Below are positions 19,009 to 23,944 of a stretch of 64,000 nt of DNA, piece by piece. Every line of letters begins with the position of its first letter. Position 1 is the first letter of the stretch. The stretch lies in sequence record MW760841.1. One strand, 5' to 3'. The position numbers were made by a program, and so were the translations under genes. The notes beneath the pieces were generated by a model, which did no database searches, was not told where the DNA came from, and saw only the letters and a program-made list of their open reading frames with translations.

Positions 19009-19906
19009 AATTCACCCGACCCTCATCCAGTTCCAACGGCTGCATGCATGGAACGAAAACGCGTTGGTCTATCGTCATGGGTCGCTGGAACAACAGTGCC
19101 TGAAAATATACCGTTACCTCGGCACGTTGGCCGAGGGCGTGCAGAAGATGAACGGATTAGATGTCGCTGCGGGTGCTGGTAATTTATTGGCGAACCTGTT
19201 CACCTGCTGTGCATTCACCGGTATCACCGCCGAAGAGTTTGAGTATCAATTCAAAAGGGATAGCACCGGCCGCTTCGGTTCGCAGTCACCGGCGATGCAA
19301 GTGAAACTGCTGGTTGCTGAAACGGTACGAGCGGTGTCAGACTTGAGCCACTGGGATTCTGTGGCCGGTACCCGCTTATCCCGTGCCGTGGCTTTGGAAT
19401 CGGTGGGTCTGGCTATCGAAGCGTTAAAGGCCGTGGCCAGTAAAAGCGGCATCTACCTTGACCGTTGTGTGGTGAACGCTGTGACTTCTATTGTTAAGAA
19501 GGAAGGACAGCTCAATGAGTTCGGTCAGTTCGGCCCACGGCCAGAACCGGAAATGATGTTCGTCGATCCGAATGGAAACCCGCCTACCGCGACTAAACCT
19601 TCGGGCTACACTATTTCTCAATACATCACTGTCTCACTGCGTAACCGTTTCGATGAACTTCGCCAGGAGATGGTGGGTGAGATACTCGTAGCACCGCTTA
19701 TCGGGAAAGTTGACCGTGAGATAAATCAACGTCTGGATGACTTGCTCGAAAAATTCATTCGTTCTGACGATGAGCGACGGAAAATGTTGTTTGAACGCAA
19801 TCCACACTTTACCGTCAAAATCGAACAGGGCGAACTCAACGTTAATGCCAACGAAGACTTGGCGTGGTTATTAGACACACTCAGTAAGGATCAGCGGAAA
19901 ATATGA
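18998..19906 (+). CDS. MazG-like (all-alpha NTP-PPase) protein with degenerate active site
   Basis: [22 protein letters not shown]...GAGNLLANL matches the MazG-like pattern without the acidic metal ligands; C-terminal part resembles 23048..23944. Start at ATG 18998 after GAGG. Confidence 0.55.
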
Positions 19907-20922
19907 ACCAGTATCTCATTCTCTTAAATCAGGTCCAACGTGACGGCCGTGTGAAGAAAGACCGTACCGGGACAGGTACCAAATCCCTGTTTGGGGCGCA
20001 GATGCGTTTCAATCTGCAAGAAGGCTTCCCGTTGGTAACAACTAAGCGCTGCCACTTACGCTCTATTATTCACGAACTGTTGTGGTTCCTCAAGGGCGAT
20101 ACCAATATCCAGTATTTGAAAGACAACAACGTCAGTATCTGGGACGAGTGGGCCGATAAGGATGGTAACCTTGGCCCGGTGTACGGTAAGCAGTGGCGGG
20201 CGTGGACAGCTCACGAAGATATGCCGGTGTTTAACCGCGAAGCCTGTGGTGCGTTAGAGGCCGATGGCTGGGAAGAATCAGGGTCATGTGGTTCTGATAT
20301 TTTGTACACCAAAGACATCGACCAGATTGCTAAGGTTATTGACCAACTGCGTAATGACCCGGACAATCGTCGAATTATCGTCAGTGCCTGGAACGTGGCT
20401 GACTTGGACGATATGGCCTTAGCGCCATGCCATGCGTTCTTCCAGTTCTACACCCGTGAACTGGACTTTGATGAGCGTTTACATTGGCTCGATGTAAACA
20501 TGCACGAGAAGTTCCTGGAACCTATCTTCCGCAATGAAGATGTGGATAATCTGGAAGCGATGCACACACGCCTGGATGACTTTGCGGTGCCACGTCGTGA
20601 ACTGTCCTGTCAACTGTACCAGCGCAGTGCGGATATGTTCCTGGGCGTGCCGTTCAACATCGCGTCCTACGCGTTGCTGATTCACATGGTGGCTCATCAG
20701 GTTAACATGACCGTTGGTGACTTTGTGTGGACGGGTGGCGATGTGCACATCTACAGCAACCACGAAGAGCAGGTTAAGTTGCAACTGTCGCGTAATCCAC
20801 GCCCACTGCCGAAGCTGAGAATTTTGCGTAAGCCGGATTCTATCTTCGACTACAAGTTCGAAGACTTCGAAATTACGGGCTATGATCCGCATCCCGGTAT
20901 CAAAGCACCGGTGGCTATTTAA
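19903..20922 (+). CDS. thyA: Thymidylate synthase
   Basis: [68 protein letters not shown]; two in-frame insertions relative to E. coli ThyA. Confidence 0.97.
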
Positions 20923-20931
20923 GGAGACCCT

Positions 20932-21393
20932 ATGGGTGACGTGTTGAAGTTCCAACCTAAGAAGTTGGACGATGCTGAAATTTGGATTCCTGGCCACCAA
21001 GGTGGGGAACCAAAAGTATTTACAGTACCGCCAACTGATATGTACTGGTGGGCATTGATTCTTGACCGAATCAGTAGCTTTAGTCGGACGTTCGAAGGTT
21101 GTGTTTACTTCTACTCCGATCCCTATGGTTTCATGAACGAATGTTACGCTAAGCGTACTAAGTTGCTCGAGATTAATGTTACTCGTGCGAACCTGGTGAA
21201 CATTCTGAAAGCCATGCCGTACACTCACGTCAGCAGCCTCAACAGTCTGCTGAATGATGATGATTACAACCTGGTGTTTGACAACGCGGTTATGCACCTG
21301 GGCGATGACCTTAACCTGATGTACGACGTAGGGTTGTTTATCACCCCTACCGATATGCCGGGTACCTTTAAAATCACATATGTGGAAATCTAA
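20932..21393 (+). CDS. Hypothetical protein
   Basis: 153-aa ORF, AAGGAG RBS. Confidence 0.7.
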   Translation: MGDVLKFQPKKLDDAEIWIPGHQGGEPKVFTVPPTDMYWWALILDRISSFSRTFEGCVYFYSDPYGFMNECYAKRTKLLEINVTRANLVNILKAMPYTHVSSLNSLLNDDDYNLVFDNAVMHLGDDLNLMYDVGLFITPTDMPGTFKITYVEI

Positions 21394-22227
21394 ATGACTA
21401 ACAAACTGTTCTTCTTCACCGACTGCGTTTACTCTGCTCCAATGTCTCCGTATTACTACGGCGCGGCCGGTGCACGCGACCTGGCTCACCTGCATGAGCT
21501 GATCGGCACCAACAAGGTCGATACCGTCGAACTGGGCGATACCAGCTTCGAAGGTCAGATTACCGTTGGTCAGTCTTTCCGTGAAGTGGAAGGGCGTACC
21601 TTTGACGAGCCACGTAAAGCACAGGTTCCGGTCTACCGTGTGAAAGAAGGCGTTGACCTGACTGAACGTCGTGCCAAACTGGTTGAGCTGCTGTGCCAGC
21701 AATACGGCTGGACACCAGAAGCGGTTATCGTACACATGGACGTAATGGATCGCATCCCGGCCGAAGCCGCCAGCTCTAACAAAGAGATGTGGCGTGGTTG
21801 GGTGAACGTTGAAATGATTCCAGAACGTATGCCGATGTTCATCACCTTCGAAGGCAACGACGAAGAGAACTTCGAACCGACTGGCGAAACGGTAGAGTAC
21901 GATTACAAAGTTATCGTTGATCGTGAACTGACCCCGCTGTGGCATATGGTCGACCTGCTGGAAGCGACCGGGCTGGATGAATTCTTCTCCGAAGCAGCCT
22001 ACCTCTGCCGCAAAGGCACTATGTCCGCTACGCCTGTAGACGGCTGGGCCGAAGTGACCGAAACATACGGCAACCACGAAATCAAACTGTGGTTGAACCC
22101 GGACTGGAAATCCCTCCAGGAAAAACTGATTGCTGGCCTGAACGAAGAAGTTGAACGTCAACAAGCAGCAAAAGCAGCCGCAGGTGAAGTCGCACCTGAA
22201 GCTGATCTCCCTAACATCGACGAATAA
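21394..22227 (+). CDS. Acidic hypothetical protein, probably highly expressed
   Basis: 277-aa ORF, TAAATG coupling, strong GAA/CTG/CGT/AAA codon bias. Confidence 0.75.
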   Translation: MTNKLFFFTDCVYSAPMSPYYYGAAGARDLAHLHELIGTNKVDTVELGDTSFEGQITVGQSFREVEGRTFDEPRKAQVPVYRVKEGVDLTERRAKLVELLCQQYGWTPEAVIVHMDVMDRIPAEAASSNKEMWRGWVNVEMIPERMPMFITFEGNDEENFEPTGETVEYDYKVIVDRELTPLWHMVDLLEATGLDEFFSEAAYLCRKGTMSATPVDGWAEVTETYGNHEIKLWLNPDWKSLQEKLIAGLNEEVERQQAAKAAAGEVAPEADLPNIDE

Positions 22228-22237
22228 GGTACATACA

Positions 22238-22690
22238 GTGTCTAAGACCCTAATCAATTACGATATTGTGGTGAAAGAACTGTCTAAAGGTTTGATTGCT
22301 TTAGACGATGAAATTGTGCTGCGTTGCAATATGTTACCGCATATCGCGCTCAGTGAATTTCGTACCATCCGCTATGGTGCAGGACGCCAGAAAGGGGTGA
22401 CGGACTACATCGCTAAATTGGCCGGTGAACACCCTGGCCCTGTACTGGTGCTGACGCATGCGGTACCGTTACGCGATGAGTTTATGTTCCGCGTCGAAGG
22501 CAAATATCCCGGTAAAGACAATACCACATCGTTATGCGGGTATTTCCCGGAGAATTGGCGGGTTGAAAAATTCAGTCTTGTCATTATCGATGAAGCTGGG
22601 TTCTTCTTCAAGAAGTTTGGCTACGATAAAATCTATCGTAGTCTGGCAACCCAAACAACTGACGATGTGGTGATTCATTTGATTAACTGA
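22238..22690 (+). CDS. Small P-loop NTPase-like protein (degenerate Walker A)
   Basis: GAGRQKGVT and VIIDEAGF motifs; GTG start after AAGG. Confidence 0.5.
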   Translation: MSKTLINYDIVVKELSKGLIALDDEIVLRCNMLPHIALSEFRTIRYGAGRQKGVTDYIAKLAGEHPGPVLVLTHAVPLRDEFMFRVEGKYPGKDNTTSLCGYFPENWRVEKFSLVIIDEAGFFFKKFGYDKIYRSLATQTTDDVVIHLIN

Positions 22691-22697
22691 GGGTGTT

Positions 22698-22982
22698 ATG
22701 TCTGGGAAAGATTTATCGCAGTATCTGGTAGAAGGCAATCGTGGGACGACCCCGCACAAAAACGATGCTGTGGTTCAGGAAGAGATGAACGCGCAGTTTG
22801 ACCGTGACATTGGTCGTGGTTTGACAGCCGAAGCATCACAAGCGCAATTCAACCAACAGAATGCACATCTGGCGGATGAGTTCGACCTGAGCCATCTCGG
22901 CTTAGAAGGTGTCACCGTAGAGGGTGGCGTAGACGCTGCAATGGACGACTCCAGTTGTCCTAGTGGTGCCTGCAAAATTTAA
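22698..22982 (+). CDS. Small acidic protein ending in an NrdA-like C-terminal redox tail
   Basis: GAGG RBS; ends DDSSCPSGACKI-stop versus E. coli NrdA QDDGCESGACKI-stop. Confidence 0.75.
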   Translation: MSGKDLSQYLVEGNRGTTPHKNDAVVQEEMNAQFDRDIGRGLTAEASQAQFNQQNAHLADEFDLSHLGLEGVTVEGGVDAAMDDSSCPSGACKI

Positions 22983-22989
22983 CGTATCT

Positions 22990-23027
22990 GGGTGTCCTTA
23001 TGGACACCCCTTTTTCTTTTCTTTTTT
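22990..23027 (+). terminator. Intrinsic terminator
   Basis: GGGTGTCC-TTAT-GGACACCC then a long T-rich tract. Confidence 0.85.
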
Positions 23028-23047: not shown

Positions 23048-23944
23048 ATGGGCGAGACTTTTGCTATTCAGATTCCTTACAACATCGTTGTGATTACCCC
23101 GGAACTGGTGCGTCAGGTAAACTACCGCATTGCGGCTATCGGCCACCAAATTCAGTTCGAGAATCTGTACGCGATGGCGCAAAACGTGGAAACCGGCGCA
23201 TACCGTGTCGAAGGTAAGGTTAAAACCGGCACCAGTGCTATCGACATTGATGATCTGGAAATTCCAATGACCTTAGAAGGTGTGGAATTCAAAGGCACCA
23301 CTACGCACCCACGTCGTATTCGTCTGTTCTCTATCAGCCAGTGTATCGCGCATGTTCTTGGTTGGTCTACTTCCCGTGGTATTATCGAGAATGGCAAGTG
23401 GACAACACAGGTCACCAAGTTCTACGAAGAAGACGGTGAAGCAGCAACCGGTATCAGCAAAACCAAACACCGTCTTATCATGGATGGTTTGGGTGATGCG
23501 CTGGTTGTTCTGGTGAACGTTCTGGCATTGACCAAATACGGCGCTGAAGAAATCAACAGCCTGTTGAGCGAAGCCCGTGAACGCATTGAGCAGAATGTGC
23601 CGTACGGTGATGCTCATCGCCTGTTCCACAAAATGCGCTTGAGCTTCACGCAGGCTAACGATGCCTTCTATCAGGGCGAAGACTGGCGTACTCGTAACAG
23701 TATCACGGTTGAAGACCAGCCTGAACTCCCAGCTATTTTCCTGCTGGATGTTGAGGCCCACCTGGTTAACGCGCTGTGGTATATGGAAGCACTGGCTCGT
23801 GCGTACAACGTGACGCTGGAGCAATGTTTCTCTCTCGCGTGGGACGAAATCAAAGACCGTAAAGGTTTCCTGAATGCTGACGGTATCTTCGTGAAAGAAG
23901 CCGACATGACCGCTGAGCAGAAAGCTGCCCAGGGTTCTCTTTAA
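23048..23944 (+). CDS. MazG-like nucleotide pyrophosphohydrolase
   Basis: TKFYEEDGEAATG...IMDGLGDALVVL and LEQCFSLAWDEIKDRKG motifs; acidic ligands intact. Confidence 0.75.
   Translation: MGETFAIQIPYNIVVITPELVRQVNYRIAAIGHQIQFENLYAMAQNVETGAYRVEGKVKTGTSAIDIDDLEIPMTLEGVEFKGTTTHPRRIRLFSISQCIAHVLGWSTSRGIIENGKWTTQVTKFYEEDGEAATGISKTKHRLIMDGLGDALVVLVNVLALTKYGAEEINSLLSEARERIEQNVPYGDAHRLFHKMRLSFTQANDAFYQGEDWRTRNSITVEDQPELPAIFLLDVEAHLVNALWYMEALARAYNVTLEQCFSLAWDEIKDRKGFLNADGIFVKEADMTAEQKAAQGSL

What the first reader, a model, noticed from the sequence alone, without database searches (positions are those of the whole stretch)
22698..22982. Stand-alone 94-aa protein carrying a near copy of the ribonucleotide reductase (NrdA) C-terminal redox tail
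Seen: the ORF ends ...AAMDDSSCPSGACKI-stop, and the rest is acidic, probably disordered and has no RNR catalytic motif. Established: E. coli NrdA ends ...QDDGCESGACKI, and this CxxxxC pair (C754/C759) on a flexible tail carries electrons from thioredoxin/glutaredoxin to the active-site cysteines. The last six residues (SGACKI) and both Cys are identical. The gene lies between thyA and a MazG-like hydrolase. Inference: it could be a trans-acting redox shuttle that speeds RNR turnover, a decoy that blocks host NrdA or titrates Trx/Grx, or a partner of a tail-less phage RNR encoded elsewhere. I know of no described free RNR-tail protein.
Basis: partly seen in the sequence, partly recalled or inferred. 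Interest (0 to 1): 0.85.

Follow-up and report, generated by a model that had tools for sequence, protein, structure and literature searches.

The report
Free-standing RNR redox-tail protein family
A giant phage of the fire-blight bacterium encodes a small, floppy protein whose last dozen residues copy the electron-carrying tail of its host's DNA-precursor enzyme (ribonucleotide reductase), and it belongs to a large, so far undescribed family found in many phages and in bacteria such as Neisseria.

Summary
ORF 22698-22982 (94 aa) of Erwinia jumbo phage pEa_SNUABM_4/8 ends CPSGACKI. Annotated E. coli and Erwinia NrdA end ...DDGCESGACKI, with Cys754/Cys759. A profile of the ORF's relatives hits only class Ia RNR alpha chains in the whole PDB, aligned C-terminus to C-terminus.

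It is not an nrdA remnant. The 249-kb phage has no RNR, and the ORF is under purifying selection with its own Shine-Dalgarno sequence and terminator. It belongs to a family of at least 383 clusters, all labelled "hypothetical", in many phage lineages and in Neisseria, Moraxella, Eikenella and Rheinheimera. The Cys pair is kept in 122 of 122 retrieved members.

Phage copies sit near thyA, mazG, dCMP deaminase or dNMP kinase. Bacterial copies sit near thioredoxin, peroxiredoxin, catalase or inside the isc operon. The module is also fused to a deoxyribonucleotidase and to a MazG-type pyrophosphohydrolase.

The deoxyribonucleotidase fusion lies directly upstream of the only tail-less NrdA among 81 relatives. 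That implies the module can serve NrdA in trans.

Best reading (0.45): an auxiliary trans-acting redox tail plugged into the host Trx/Grx-NrdA relay. An inhibitor/decoy or a docking tag remain live rivals. Function is untested.

The parts
22698..22982 (+). Gene for the 94-aa free NrdA-tail protein (pEaSNUABM8_00263, annotated 'hypothetical protein'), stop codon included
   Evidence: ORF list and sequence; annotation; homologs and synteny; purifying selection
22689..22693 (+). Shine-Dalgarno-like GAGGG 5 nt before the ATG. It overlaps the TGA stop (22688-22690) of the upstream gene, so the two genes are probably translationally coupled
   Evidence: Sequence read directly
22698..22736 (+). N-terminal 13 residues, invariant among the closest relatives (a lineage-specific motif of unknown partner)
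   Evidence: Alignment A1
22737..22874 (+). Variable linker with lineage-specific insertions and deletions; predicted helical but at low confidence
   Evidence: Indels in A1; AlphaFold pLDDT 49-71
22875..22904 (+). Acidic-hydrophobic motif (residues D60-L69, DEFDLSHLGL), a family-wide second motif
   Evidence: Alignments A2 and A3; a motif of this type is present in 102 of 122 members. Likeness to the NrdB C-terminus is not significant for this protein (p = 0.36)
22911..22934 (+). V72-D79 (VTVEGGVD) hydrophobic patch preceding the tail, shared with Neisseria and many phage members
22944..22979 (+). NrdA-type redox tail, residues D83-I94 (DDSSCPSGACKI). Cys87 is at 22956-22958 and Cys92 at 22971-22973
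   Evidence: Identity with E. coli and Erwinia NrdA ends; PDB profile hits only RNR alpha C-termini; per-column conservation
22990..23019 (+). Intrinsic terminator-like hairpin (8-bp stem, 6 G-C pairs) plus a T-run, 8 nt after the stop codon
22238..22690 (+). Upstream co-travelling gene (150 aa, phrog_2586, unknown function; weak RecA-like/P-loop fold)
23048..23944 (+). MazG-type nucleotide pyrophosphohydrolase gene, the immediate downstream neighbour
   Evidence: PHROG 7855 at E = 5e-112; annotation
19903..20922 (+). Thymidylate synthase gene heading the same-strand gene block
   Evidence: Pfam PF00303 at E = 3e-117

Best explanation
The ORF encodes a real, expressed, largely disordered small protein. 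Its last ~12 residues are a working copy of the class Ia NrdA C-terminal redox tail. It acts in trans on the host's thioredoxin/glutaredoxin -> NrdA tail -> NrdA active-site electron relay.

My committed reading is as follows. The reduced Cys87/Cys92 dithiol is regenerated by host Trx or Grx, as NrdA's own tail is. It can enter the NrdA active site and reduce the catalytic disulfide. This gives a phage that has no RNR of its own an auxiliary or 'spare' tail that sustains host NrdAB turnover and so dNTP supply. The upstream acidic-hydrophobic motif provides docking.

Shown: the tail identity, the family, its conservation, the absence of a phage RNR, the genomic contexts, the fusions, and one natural case of a tail-less NrdA paired with a trans module.

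Inferred: reduction by Trx/Grx, entry into the NrdA active site, and the direction of the effect (support rather than inhibition).
For: (1) The tail equals the NrdA tail. E. coli and Erwinia NrdA end DDGCESGACKI and the ORF ends DDSSCPSGACKI. The family profile hits only RNR alpha chains in the PDB, plus the isolated 25-residue R1 tail peptide 1qfn_B, always C-terminus to C-terminus.
(2) Both Cys, their spacing and the terminal K-I are kept in 122 of 122 members, as full redox cycling would require. Purifying selection is strong: 13 synonymous against 2 non-synonymous changes over the last 36 codons.
(3) A natural split exists. A deoxyribonucleotidase carrying the module (P0154) lies 55 nt upstream of an nrdA-nrdB pair whose NrdA stops right after the YYHNTRDG motif, without any Cys tail. 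This is reproduced in 3 independent assemblies. All 80 closest viral relatives of that NrdA carry a Cys-pair tail in cis.
(4) The phage has thyA, DHFR, dTMP kinase and MazG but no RNR, so it depends on host NrdAB.
(5) Free tails lie near thyA in at least 4 phage lineages, and near dCMP deaminase, a dNMP kinase and MazG.
(6) Bacterial copies lie 70 nt upstream of a thioredoxin gene, next to a peroxiredoxin, upstream of catalase, and inside the isc operon.
(7) Established mechanism: the tail cysteines reduce the active site and are in turn reduced by thioredoxin (PMC11903788), and the tail of the adjacent subunit enters the catalytic site (PMC3618301). A spare-part precedent shared by E. coli and phage T4 exists in YfiD/Y06I (PMC8683613).
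Against: The host NrdA already has its own tethered tail, so the benefit of an extra free tail is not obvious. No direct evidence shows binding, reduction or any effect on RNR. The only experimental precedent for an isolated RNR large-subunit C-terminus acting in trans (Neurospora UN-24 fragment in yeast) was toxic and formed a non-reducible complex with Rnr1p (PMC3618301), which points toward inhibition. The tail-less NrdA case is a single lineage from one sampling project, and there the module is fused to an enzyme rather than free. Fusions to a nucleotidase and to a MazG-type enzyme are explained better by a docking-tag role. The NrdB-like docking motif is not significant in this particular protein (p = 0.36).
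Confidence: 0.45

Rival explanations
1. Decoy or competitive inhibitor. The free tail, helped by its acidic-hydrophobic motif, occupies the NrdA active-site channel and/or titrates Trx/Grx. It slows re-reduction and lowers dNTP synthesis, like the yeast disordered inhibitor Sml1. In bacteria it would act as an oxidative-stress brake on replication.
For: It is small, acidic and disordered like Sml1-type inhibitors (PMC11941123). An isolated RNR large-subunit C-terminal fragment is toxic in trans and forms a non-reducible complex with Rnr1p (PMC3618301). Some lineages carry a near-perfect NrdB C-terminal octapeptide, which would compete with NrdB docking (L143 scores 19.1 against an NrdB median of 21.8, p = 5e-4; L214 p = 0.002). 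Bacterial contexts lie in stress regulons. The fusions are to enzymes that lower dNTP/dNMP pools.
Against: A phage without its own RNR would starve itself by blocking host RNR. Strict retention of both cysteines (122 of 122) is not needed for simple blocking. The tail-less NrdA with the adjacent module makes no sense for an inhibitor.
Confidence: 0.2
2. Portable docking tag or adaptor. The two-motif module tethers cargo (dNTP-pool enzymes, or whatever the lineage-specific N-terminus binds, such as the neighbouring MazG or the phrog_2586 protein) to host NrdA or to Trx/Grx, assembling a dNTP-metabolising complex around host RNR.
For: The module occurs as a C-terminal appendage on a 5'-3' deoxyribonucleotidase, a MazG-type pyrophosphohydrolase, an N4 gp49-family protein and several unknown domains. 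In the window it is a conserved N-terminal 13-mer, a variable linker and the module. It shows tight synteny with mazG and phrog_2586 across three genera.
Against: The 42-50-aa bacterial members have no room for a cargo-binding part beyond the two motifs. Absolute conservation of a redox-active Cys pair suggests chemistry, not only binding. Interactions of the NrdA tail with its partners are transient by nature.
Confidence: 0.15
3. Thioredoxin-addressable redox switch for a neighbouring enzyme (for example MazG), analogous to CP12 and the GapB C-terminal extension in chloroplasts, and unrelated to RNR itself.
For: It is adjacent to mazG in the Machinavirus, Seoulvirus and Derbicusvirus lineages. 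A MazG-type enzyme occurs fused to the module. The CP12 analogy rests on my own knowledge.
Against: Many lineages and all bacterial members lack a nearby MazG. This reading does not explain why the tail copies NrdA residue for residue. The fused MazG-type enzyme is unrelated by BLASTP to the window's MazG.
Confidence: 0.06
4. Iron-sulfur, persulfide or metal carrier. A small acidic Cys-pair protein working with IscS/IscU, like IscX or CyaY.
For: In Neisseria the gene is embedded as iscR-iscS-[gene]-iscU-iscA-hscB. The protein is very acidic (median 28% D+E).
Against: The isc context is limited to Neisseriaceae. Other bacteria and all phages show other contexts. This reading does not explain the identity with the NrdA tail or the tail-less NrdA case.
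Confidence: 0.05
5. Ribosomally synthesised peptide precursor (one UniRef entry is labelled 'FxLD family lantipeptide'): an F-x-L-D leader followed by a Cys-containing core.
For: One UniRef name. An F-D-L-D-like motif lies upstream of a Cys-containing C-terminus.
Against: No NCBIfam model hits any of 9 members, even at E <= 10. 78 of 122 members have no Ser or Thr in the last 12 residues, so no lanthionine could form. No LanB/LanC/LanM-like or radical-SAM maturase appears next to any of the contexts examined. The core is identical to the NrdA tail.
Confidence: 0.02
6. Decaying fragment of a captured nrdA gene, or a chance ORF.
For: The tail is identical to that of NrdA.
Against: There is no other NrdA or NrdB similarity anywhere in the 249-kb phage genome (best E = 0.37). 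There is no DNA-level match to E. coli nrdA, and the tail codons differ from Erwinia and E. coli nrdA almost only at synonymous sites. The ORF has its own conserved N-terminal and middle motifs, a Shine-Dalgarno sequence and a terminator. The family has at least 383 clusters. Chance expectation is 0 in 100 shuffles.
Confidence: 0.01

Closest known systems
C-terminal redox tail of class Ia ribonucleotide reductase alpha (NrdA; E. coli Cys754/Cys759)
   Same: The last 11-12 residues are shared: an acidic pair, C-x4-C, and a terminal K-I at the extreme C-terminus. NrdA is the only kind of PDB hit for the family profile. The tail is flexible and disordered.
   Different: There is no ATP-cone, all-alpha or barrel domain. 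It is a stand-alone protein of 42-94 aa with its own upstream motif that NrdA lacks. In this phage it occurs with no RNR at all.
Spare-part proteins GrcA/YfiD (E. coli) and Y06I (phage T4) for pyruvate formate-lyase
   Same: A small protein, encoded by both bacteria and phages, that duplicates the functional C-terminal element of a large radical enzyme and has a disordered N-terminus (PMC8683613). The bacterial copies sit in oxidative-stress contexts.
   Different: The enzyme and the chemistry differ (a dithiol relay rather than a glycyl radical). There is no sequence relationship. Rescue of damaged RNR is not shown.
Sml1 (yeast) and related small disordered RNR inhibitors
   Same: A small disordered protein aimed at the RNR large subunit (PMC11941123). 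By my own knowledge (Zhang et al. 2007 PNAS, which is cited in PMC3618301 but was not readable here), Sml1 competes with the Rnr1 C-terminal domain.
   Different: Sml1 does not copy the tail, and no homology was detected. The direction of the effect here is unknown.
Neurospora UN-24 C-terminal incompatibility domain
   Same: An isolated RNR large-subunit C-terminal fragment acts in trans on Rnr1p (PMC3618301).
   Different: It is a 135-aa eukaryotic fragment, expressed artificially or as an allele product, and toxic through a non-reducible complex. It is not a dedicated gene family.
NrdB C-terminal peptide that docks on NrdA
   Same: Some family members (L143, L214, L139) carry an octapeptide that scores like genuine NrdB C-termini.
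   Different: The motif is internal or N-terminal rather than C-terminal. It is not significant in the window protein (p = 0.36).
Modular rearrangements of the RNR reductant chain (for example a glutaredoxin domain fused to NrdB, cited as ref. 47 in PMC10897161)
   Same: They show that parts of the Trx/Grx-RNR electron relay can be moved between polypeptides.
   Different: In that case a reductant is fused to the enzyme. Here the enzyme's own relay tail is detached, or attached to other proteins.

Membership tests
Class Ia RNR alpha subunit (NrdA) | ATP-cone, all-alpha and ten-stranded barrel catalytic domains | tested here: not met
   Pfam finds none in the 94-aa ORF. The same search finds all three domains in bacterial NrdA controls.
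Class Ia RNR alpha subunit (NrdA) | C-terminal C-x4-C redox pair at positions -8 and -3, followed by K-I | tested here: met
   The family profile aligns to residues 741-761 of E. coli R1 chains.
Free NrdA-tail small proteins (PHROGs 14561, 24014 and 38753, function unknown; otherwise unnamed) | Small size (about 40-100 aa) with the tail at the extreme C-terminus | tested here: met
   PHROG hits at E = 7e-8 to 4e-5 on residues 62-94. 118 of 122 members end with the tail, and the other 4 read through the stop.
Free NrdA-tail small proteins (PHROGs 14561, 24014 and 38753, function unknown; otherwise unnamed) | Upstream acidic-hydrophobic motif | tested here: met
   Residues D60-L69 align with the family motif. 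The motif is present in 102 of 122 members.
Spare-part proteins (GrcA/YfiD type) | Homology to the glycyl-radical domain | tested here: not met
   No Pfam or NCBIfam hit. The resemblance is in concept only.
Spare-part proteins (GrcA/YfiD type) | Restores activity to the damaged parent enzyme | not testable with these tools
   The only indirect support is the tail-less NrdA with the adjacent module.
Sml1-type disordered RNR inhibitors | Sequence homology to Sml1, Spd1 or Hug1 | tested here: not met
   No family hit in Pfam. The PDB profile search returned only RNR alpha chains.
Sml1-type disordered RNR inhibitors | Intrinsic disorder and binding to the large subunit | tested here: inconclusive
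   Disorder is supported (pLDDT 58). Binding cannot be tested here.
Class I lanthipeptide precursor (FxLD family) | Match to the curated family model | tested here: not met
   NCBIfam gives no hit at E <= 10 for 9 members, including the UniRef-labelled one.
Class I lanthipeptide precursor (FxLD family) | Ser/Thr plus Cys in the core peptide, and a maturase gene nearby | tested here: not met
   78 of 122 members lack Ser and Thr in the last 12 residues. No maturase appears in any examined neighbourhood.
NrdB C-terminal docking peptide | Octapeptide matching the NrdB C-terminal profile beyond what composition would give | tested here: not met
   Window protein: score 2.3, p = 0.36. The feature is met only in some other lineages.
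Thioredoxin/glutaredoxin-fold redoxins | Trx fold with a CxxC active site | tested here: not met
   No Pfam hit. The Cys spacing is C-x4-C. There is no folded domain.

The most novel reading that the evidence does not exclude
A widespread, undescribed class of portable 'RNR redox-tail' modules exists in two forms: free disordered mini-proteins, and C-terminal tags on dNTP-pool enzymes. They act in trans on class Ia ribonucleotide reductase. Phages that lack RNR use them to take over or sustain the host enzyme. At least one phage lineage has moved the tail off its NrdA altogether. Bacteria, including Neisseria meningitidis, deploy them with thioredoxin, peroxiredoxin, catalase and isc genes as an oxidative-stress spare part or switch for RNR.
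Probability: 0.45. Interest if true: 0.9.

Novelty: new variant of a known kind. Interest (0 to 1): 0.8.

Why it matters
The C-terminal tail of NrdA has always been treated as a built-in part of the enzyme. A large gene family that encodes the tail alone would add an unrecognised layer of control over dNTP synthesis. That family is found in many jumbo and mid-sized phages and in the core genomes of Neisseria, Moraxella, Eikenella and Rheinheimera. It also occurs fused to other dNTP-pool enzymes and, once, next to an NrdA that has lost its own tail.

For phage biology, it suggests how phages without RNR may still manipulate the host enzyme with a gene of about 150-300 nt. For RNR enzymology, it offers a natural 'split' system that bears on how the tail reaches the active site and the reductants. 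For bacterial physiology, it links RNR re-reduction to oxidative-stress and Fe-S regulons. The family is currently invisible to annotation: every named member is 'hypothetical', and there is no Pfam or NCBIfam model.

Tried and rejected
- Single-sequence phmmer of the ORF against the PDB found nothing. Only the family profile recovered NrdA.
- The tail DNA against E. coli genomes gave no match, so there was no recent capture.
- The first genome-scan pattern had too few specified bases. The rerun fixed the stop to TAA, so members with other stop codons were missed.
- The idea that the upstream motif mimics the NrdB C-terminus was tested with a PSSM and shuffles. It is rejected for the window protein and true only for a few lineages.
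- Pfam on 20 neighbours of viral free-tail ORFs was mostly uninformative.
- N-terminal domains of the 263-, 296- and 360-aa module-bearing proteins, and of P0187 and P0190, have no Pfam or PHROG assignment.
- Relatives of the deoxyribonucleotidase fusion in IMG/VR: none found.
- BLASTP of the MazG-type fusion against the window MazG showed no similarity.
- PDB sequence searches with the two fusion proteins were uninformative.
- Literature: the tail strings do not occur in the searchable papers, no paper on free RNR tails was found, the Neisseria locus tags are not mentioned anywhere, and Zhang et al. 2007 is not held.
- A first regex for NrdA ends missed 70 of 80 loci and was replaced by tblastn coordinates.
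- The upstream gene's fold search gave only generic RecA-like/P-loop matches.
- A search for free proteins carrying the other NrdA tail type (C-x-x-C-K-I) found none in 120 hits.
Full report
OBSERVATION. The ORF at 22698-22982 (+) is present exactly as described: 94 codons plus stop, ending ...AAMDDSSCPSGACKI. A degenerate DNA pattern for C-x-x-G-A-C-K-I-stop, back-translated from the window's own residues, occurs once in the window (22956-22982) and in none of 100 dinucleotide-preserving shuffles. The window is the last 64 kb of Erwinia amylovora jumbo phage pEa_SNUABM_4 (100% identity, also to pEa_SNUABM_8). This is a phiKZ-related Machinavirus of 249 kb, and the ORF is annotated 'hypothetical protein'.

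IS IT THE NrdA TAIL? I did not use any NrdA letters from memory. About 100 of these are the ends of ORFs of roughly 760-800 aa. Two of those ORFs were confirmed by Pfam as class Ia NrdA, with ATP-cone, all-alpha and barrel domains, and the barrel model ends about 30 residues before the C-terminus. The 3' end of Enterobacter nrdA matched annotated nrdA in all 5,426 complete E. coli genomes. One copy (761 codons) ends ...VPSIQDDGCESGACKI. That gives Cys754 and Cys759, and a last six residues identical to the phage ORF's. NrdA of three Erwinia species, the host genus, ends the same way. A profile of the ORF's relatives searched against all PDB sequences returned 14 hits. All of them are class Ia RNR alpha chains or the isolated 25-residue R1 C-terminal peptide (1qfn_B), and each aligns the profile's C-terminus to the chain's C-terminus, with E between 0.001 and 0.04. 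By my own knowledge, 1QFN is glutaredoxin-1 in a mixed disulfide with that peptide; PMC10897161 lists it among glutaredoxin structures.

A FAMILY, NOT A FRAGMENT. The complete phage genome has thyA, DHFR, dTMP kinase and MazG but no annotated RNR. A tblastn with bacterial NrdA and NrdB against all 249 kb gives only noise, with a best E of 0.37. The tail DNA has no match in E. coli. Its codons differ from Erwinia and E. coli nrdA almost only at synonymous sites, and between the window and phage ChrisDB the last 36 codons show 13 synonymous against 2 non-synonymous differences. The ORF has a GAGGG Shine-Dalgarno sequence overlapping the stop of the upstream gene, and a strong terminator 8 nt after its own stop.

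Syntenic ORFs of 51-94 aa, next to mazG (directly upstream of it except in Derbicus, where one gene intervenes), occur in Machinavirus, Seoulvirus and Derbicusvirus phages, and all end with the tail. Three PHROG families of unknown function match only the C-terminal 23-33 residues.

Every one that carries a name is 'hypothetical protein'. They come from Erwinia phages and from Neisseria (including N. meningitidis), Eikenella, Alysiella, Moraxella, Rheinheimera and Alishewanella. An exhaustive HMMER scan of 1.84 billion cluster representatives gave 82 clusters at 50% identity. Nearly all are 36-120 aa with the match ending at their C-terminus, and NrdA itself is not among them. A viral-contig scan gave 104 pattern hits: 43 NrdA-type ends and about 55 free ORFs of 40-86 aa, on contigs of 30-360 kb.

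Among the 122 retrieved proteins, Cys occupies positions -8 and -3 in 118. The other four keep the whole tail and read on past the usual stop. Shares by column are: D at -11 in 105, D at -10 in 108, G at -5 in 118, A at -4 in 117, K at -2 in 119, and I at -1 in 117. As a control, the other NrdA tail type (C-x-x-C-K-I) gave 120 of 120 NrdA ends and no free ORF. The search method therefore does not itself generate 'free tails'.

ARCHITECTURE. The AlphaFold2 model is low-confidence throughout (mean pLDDT 58, pTM 0.26). The closest relatives share the N-terminal 13 residues and the last ~35 residues, while the middle varies by insertions and deletions. Across the family there is a second motif upstream of the tail: an acidic-hydrophobic stretch, which in the window is D60-L69, present in 102 of 122 members.

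I tested whether this stretch mimics the NrdB C-terminal peptide that docks on NrdA. I used a PSSM built from 44 distinct NrdB ends taken from the same loci and 2,000 composition-preserving shuffles per cluster. A few lineages carry a near-perfect NrdB octapeptide (score 19.1 against an NrdB median of 21.8, p = 5e-4; another at p = 0.002). The window protein does not (score 2.3, p = 0.36). The idea is therefore not supported for this protein.

CONTEXTS. In phages, thyA lies 1.5-5 kb from the free-tail ORF in at least four lineages whose ThyA proteins are only distantly related. MazG and the phrog_2586 gene flank it in the SPN3US/Machinavirus lineage. A dNMP kinase follows it in a ~60-kb lineage. 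dCMP deaminase and ThyA bracket it in the pEa_SNUABM_14 type. Endonuclease I and ThyA flank it in a 194-kb phiKZ-like contig.

In bacteria:
- N. meningitidis and relatives have iscR-iscS-[gene]-iscU-iscA-hscB.
- Moraxella bovoculi has an FMN oxidoreductase, then the gene, then thioredoxin 70 nt downstream on the same strand.
- In Alysiella the gene is divergent from an AhpC/TSA peroxiredoxin.
- In two Rheinheimera loci the gene lies directly upstream of catalase.
- One member sits next to a YfbR-like 5'-deoxynucleotidase.

These bacteria also have NrdA with an intact tail. In Neisseria sp. CCUG12390, both occur in the same genome.

FUSIONS AND A NATURAL SPLIT. The module also ends longer proteins. 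P0154 is a 5'-3' deoxyribonucleotidase (PHROG 2643, E = 3e-15) followed by the tail family (E = 1e-8). P0174 is a nucleotide pyrophosphohydrolase of MazG type (PHROG 671, E = 2e-30) followed by the tail. There is also an N4 gp49-family protein and several proteins with unknown N-terminal domains.

P0154 is encoded 55 nt upstream of an intein-containing nrdA followed by nrdB, beside DHFR. That NrdA stops eight residues after the conserved YYHNT motif (…RDGSGDQL-stop) and has no cysteine tail. Only 46 nt separate it from nrdB. The arrangement is identical in three independent assemblies. All 80 of the closest viral relatives of this NrdA have a Cys-pair tail in cis, and the two nearest (64% and 62% identity) have the C-x4-C type. 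So the one NrdA that has lost its tail sits beside a gene that supplies the module.

MECHANISM. [quoted passage not shown] In the dimer, the tail of the adjacent subunit enters the catalytic site (PMC3618301), so the tail already works 'in trans' between subunits.

Inference: a free polypeptide that ends with the same residues shares the tail's partners. The complete retention of both cysteines and of the terminal residues points toward genuine redox relay rather than mere blocking. So do the thioredoxin and peroxiredoxin neighbours, the dNTP-metabolism neighbourhoods, the lack of a phage RNR, and above all the tail-less NrdA beside the module. I put this reading at 0.45.

It remains possible that the free form inhibits (0.20). 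The only experimental precedent for an isolated large-subunit C-terminus in trans was toxic (PMC3618301), and some members carry an NrdB-like peptide that would compete with NrdB. It is also possible that the module is mainly a docking tag that gathers dNTP-pool enzymes on host RNR (0.15), which is the reading that best explains the fusions. Minor rivals are a redox switch for MazG, an Fe-S or persulfide carrier, a lanthipeptide precursor, and an nrdA remnant. They are weighed in their own sections; the last two are effectively refuted.

COMPARISON AND NOVELTY. The protein is not a member of the NrdA family, because it has no catalytic domains. It is a member of an unnamed family whose only existing handles are three function-unknown PHROGs. 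In how it may work, the closest known things are the following:
- NrdA's own tail.
- The YfiD/Y06I spare-part proteins of E. coli and phage T4, of which the authors say only these two have been validated (PMC8683613).
- Sml1-type disordered inhibitors (PMC11941123).
- The UN-24 C-terminal domain (PMC3618301).

I found no paper that mentions the tail strings or describes free RNR tails. I rate the finding a new variant of a known kind, with high interest.

LIMITS AND A DECLARED SLIP. No function was tested. The tail-less NrdA case is one lineage from one sampling project. The genome scans were limited in rows and restricted to TAA stops. Absence of RNR was shown only for this phage.

Noticed in passing
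L250:1944-4970 (also L251, L252): A class Ia NrdA of 1008 aa with an intein ends eight residues after the YYHNT motif, with no Cys-pair tail. All 80 of its closest viral relatives have one. The adjacent upstream gene is a deoxyribonucleotidase carrying the tail module.
   Followed up: yes
window 22238-22690: The upstream gene (150 aa, phrog_2586) co-travels with the tail ORF across the SPN3US/Machinavirus lineage and is probably translationally coupled to it. Its AlphaFold model (pLDDT 77) gives only weak generic RecA-like/P-loop matches (best E = 1.4e-3), and it is not a redoxin.
   Followed up: partly
window 19903-20922: The thymidylate synthase is 339 aa, while the Pfam model of 266 positions spans residues 2-339. 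It therefore carries about 70 extra residues as insertions relative to typical ThyA.
   Followed up: no
window 20479-22257 (- strand): A 592-aa antisense ORF overlaps the 3' end of thyA and three other + strand genes. It is unannotated in the record and is most likely a non-coding shadow ORF.
   Followed up: no
L236:6001-6210; L248:8001-8129; L016:500-625: Neisseria species, including N. meningitidis, carry a 42-aa free-tail gene (annotated as 69 aa) inside the isc operon, between iscS and iscU. No paper mentions its locus tags.
   Followed up: partly
L238:6001-6660: In Moraxella bovoculi the free-tail gene and a thioredoxin gene lie 70 nt apart on the same strand, after an Old-Yellow-Enzyme-type oxidoreductase. 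They may form an operon.
   Followed up: partly
P0093 (Alishewanella tabrizica): UniRef names this family member 'FxLD family lantipeptide'. The current NCBIfam models do not hit it even at E <= 10, so it is probably a mislabel caused by the F-D-L-D-like motif.
   Followed up: yes
L103 (MAG 'bacterium CG10_46_32'): A 166-aa cysteine-rich ORF ends CSSGACKI but otherwise looks unrelated to the family.
   Followed up: no
L089 (778-bp contig labelled Terrabacter sp. 28): It encodes a Neisseria-type free-tail ORF with a run of N. This is probably contamination of an actinobacterial assembly.
   Followed up: no
L165, L168, L176, L183 (IMG/VR): Several large-phage contigs have NrdA C-terminal halves as separate ORFs of 416-554 aa, i.e. 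a split nrdA, and these halves still end with the tail.
   Followed up: no
L335-L454 (IMG/VR): Many marine-type phage NrdA proteins end with a C-x-x-C-K-I tail. None of the 120 hits for that pattern is a free small ORF, so free tails seem specific to the C-x4-C type.
   Followed up: yes
P0179: A 570-aa cadherin/Big_9 repeat protein scored E = 8e-5 against the family profile through six acidic repeat stretches and has no tail. It is a false positive of the profile.
   Followed up: yes
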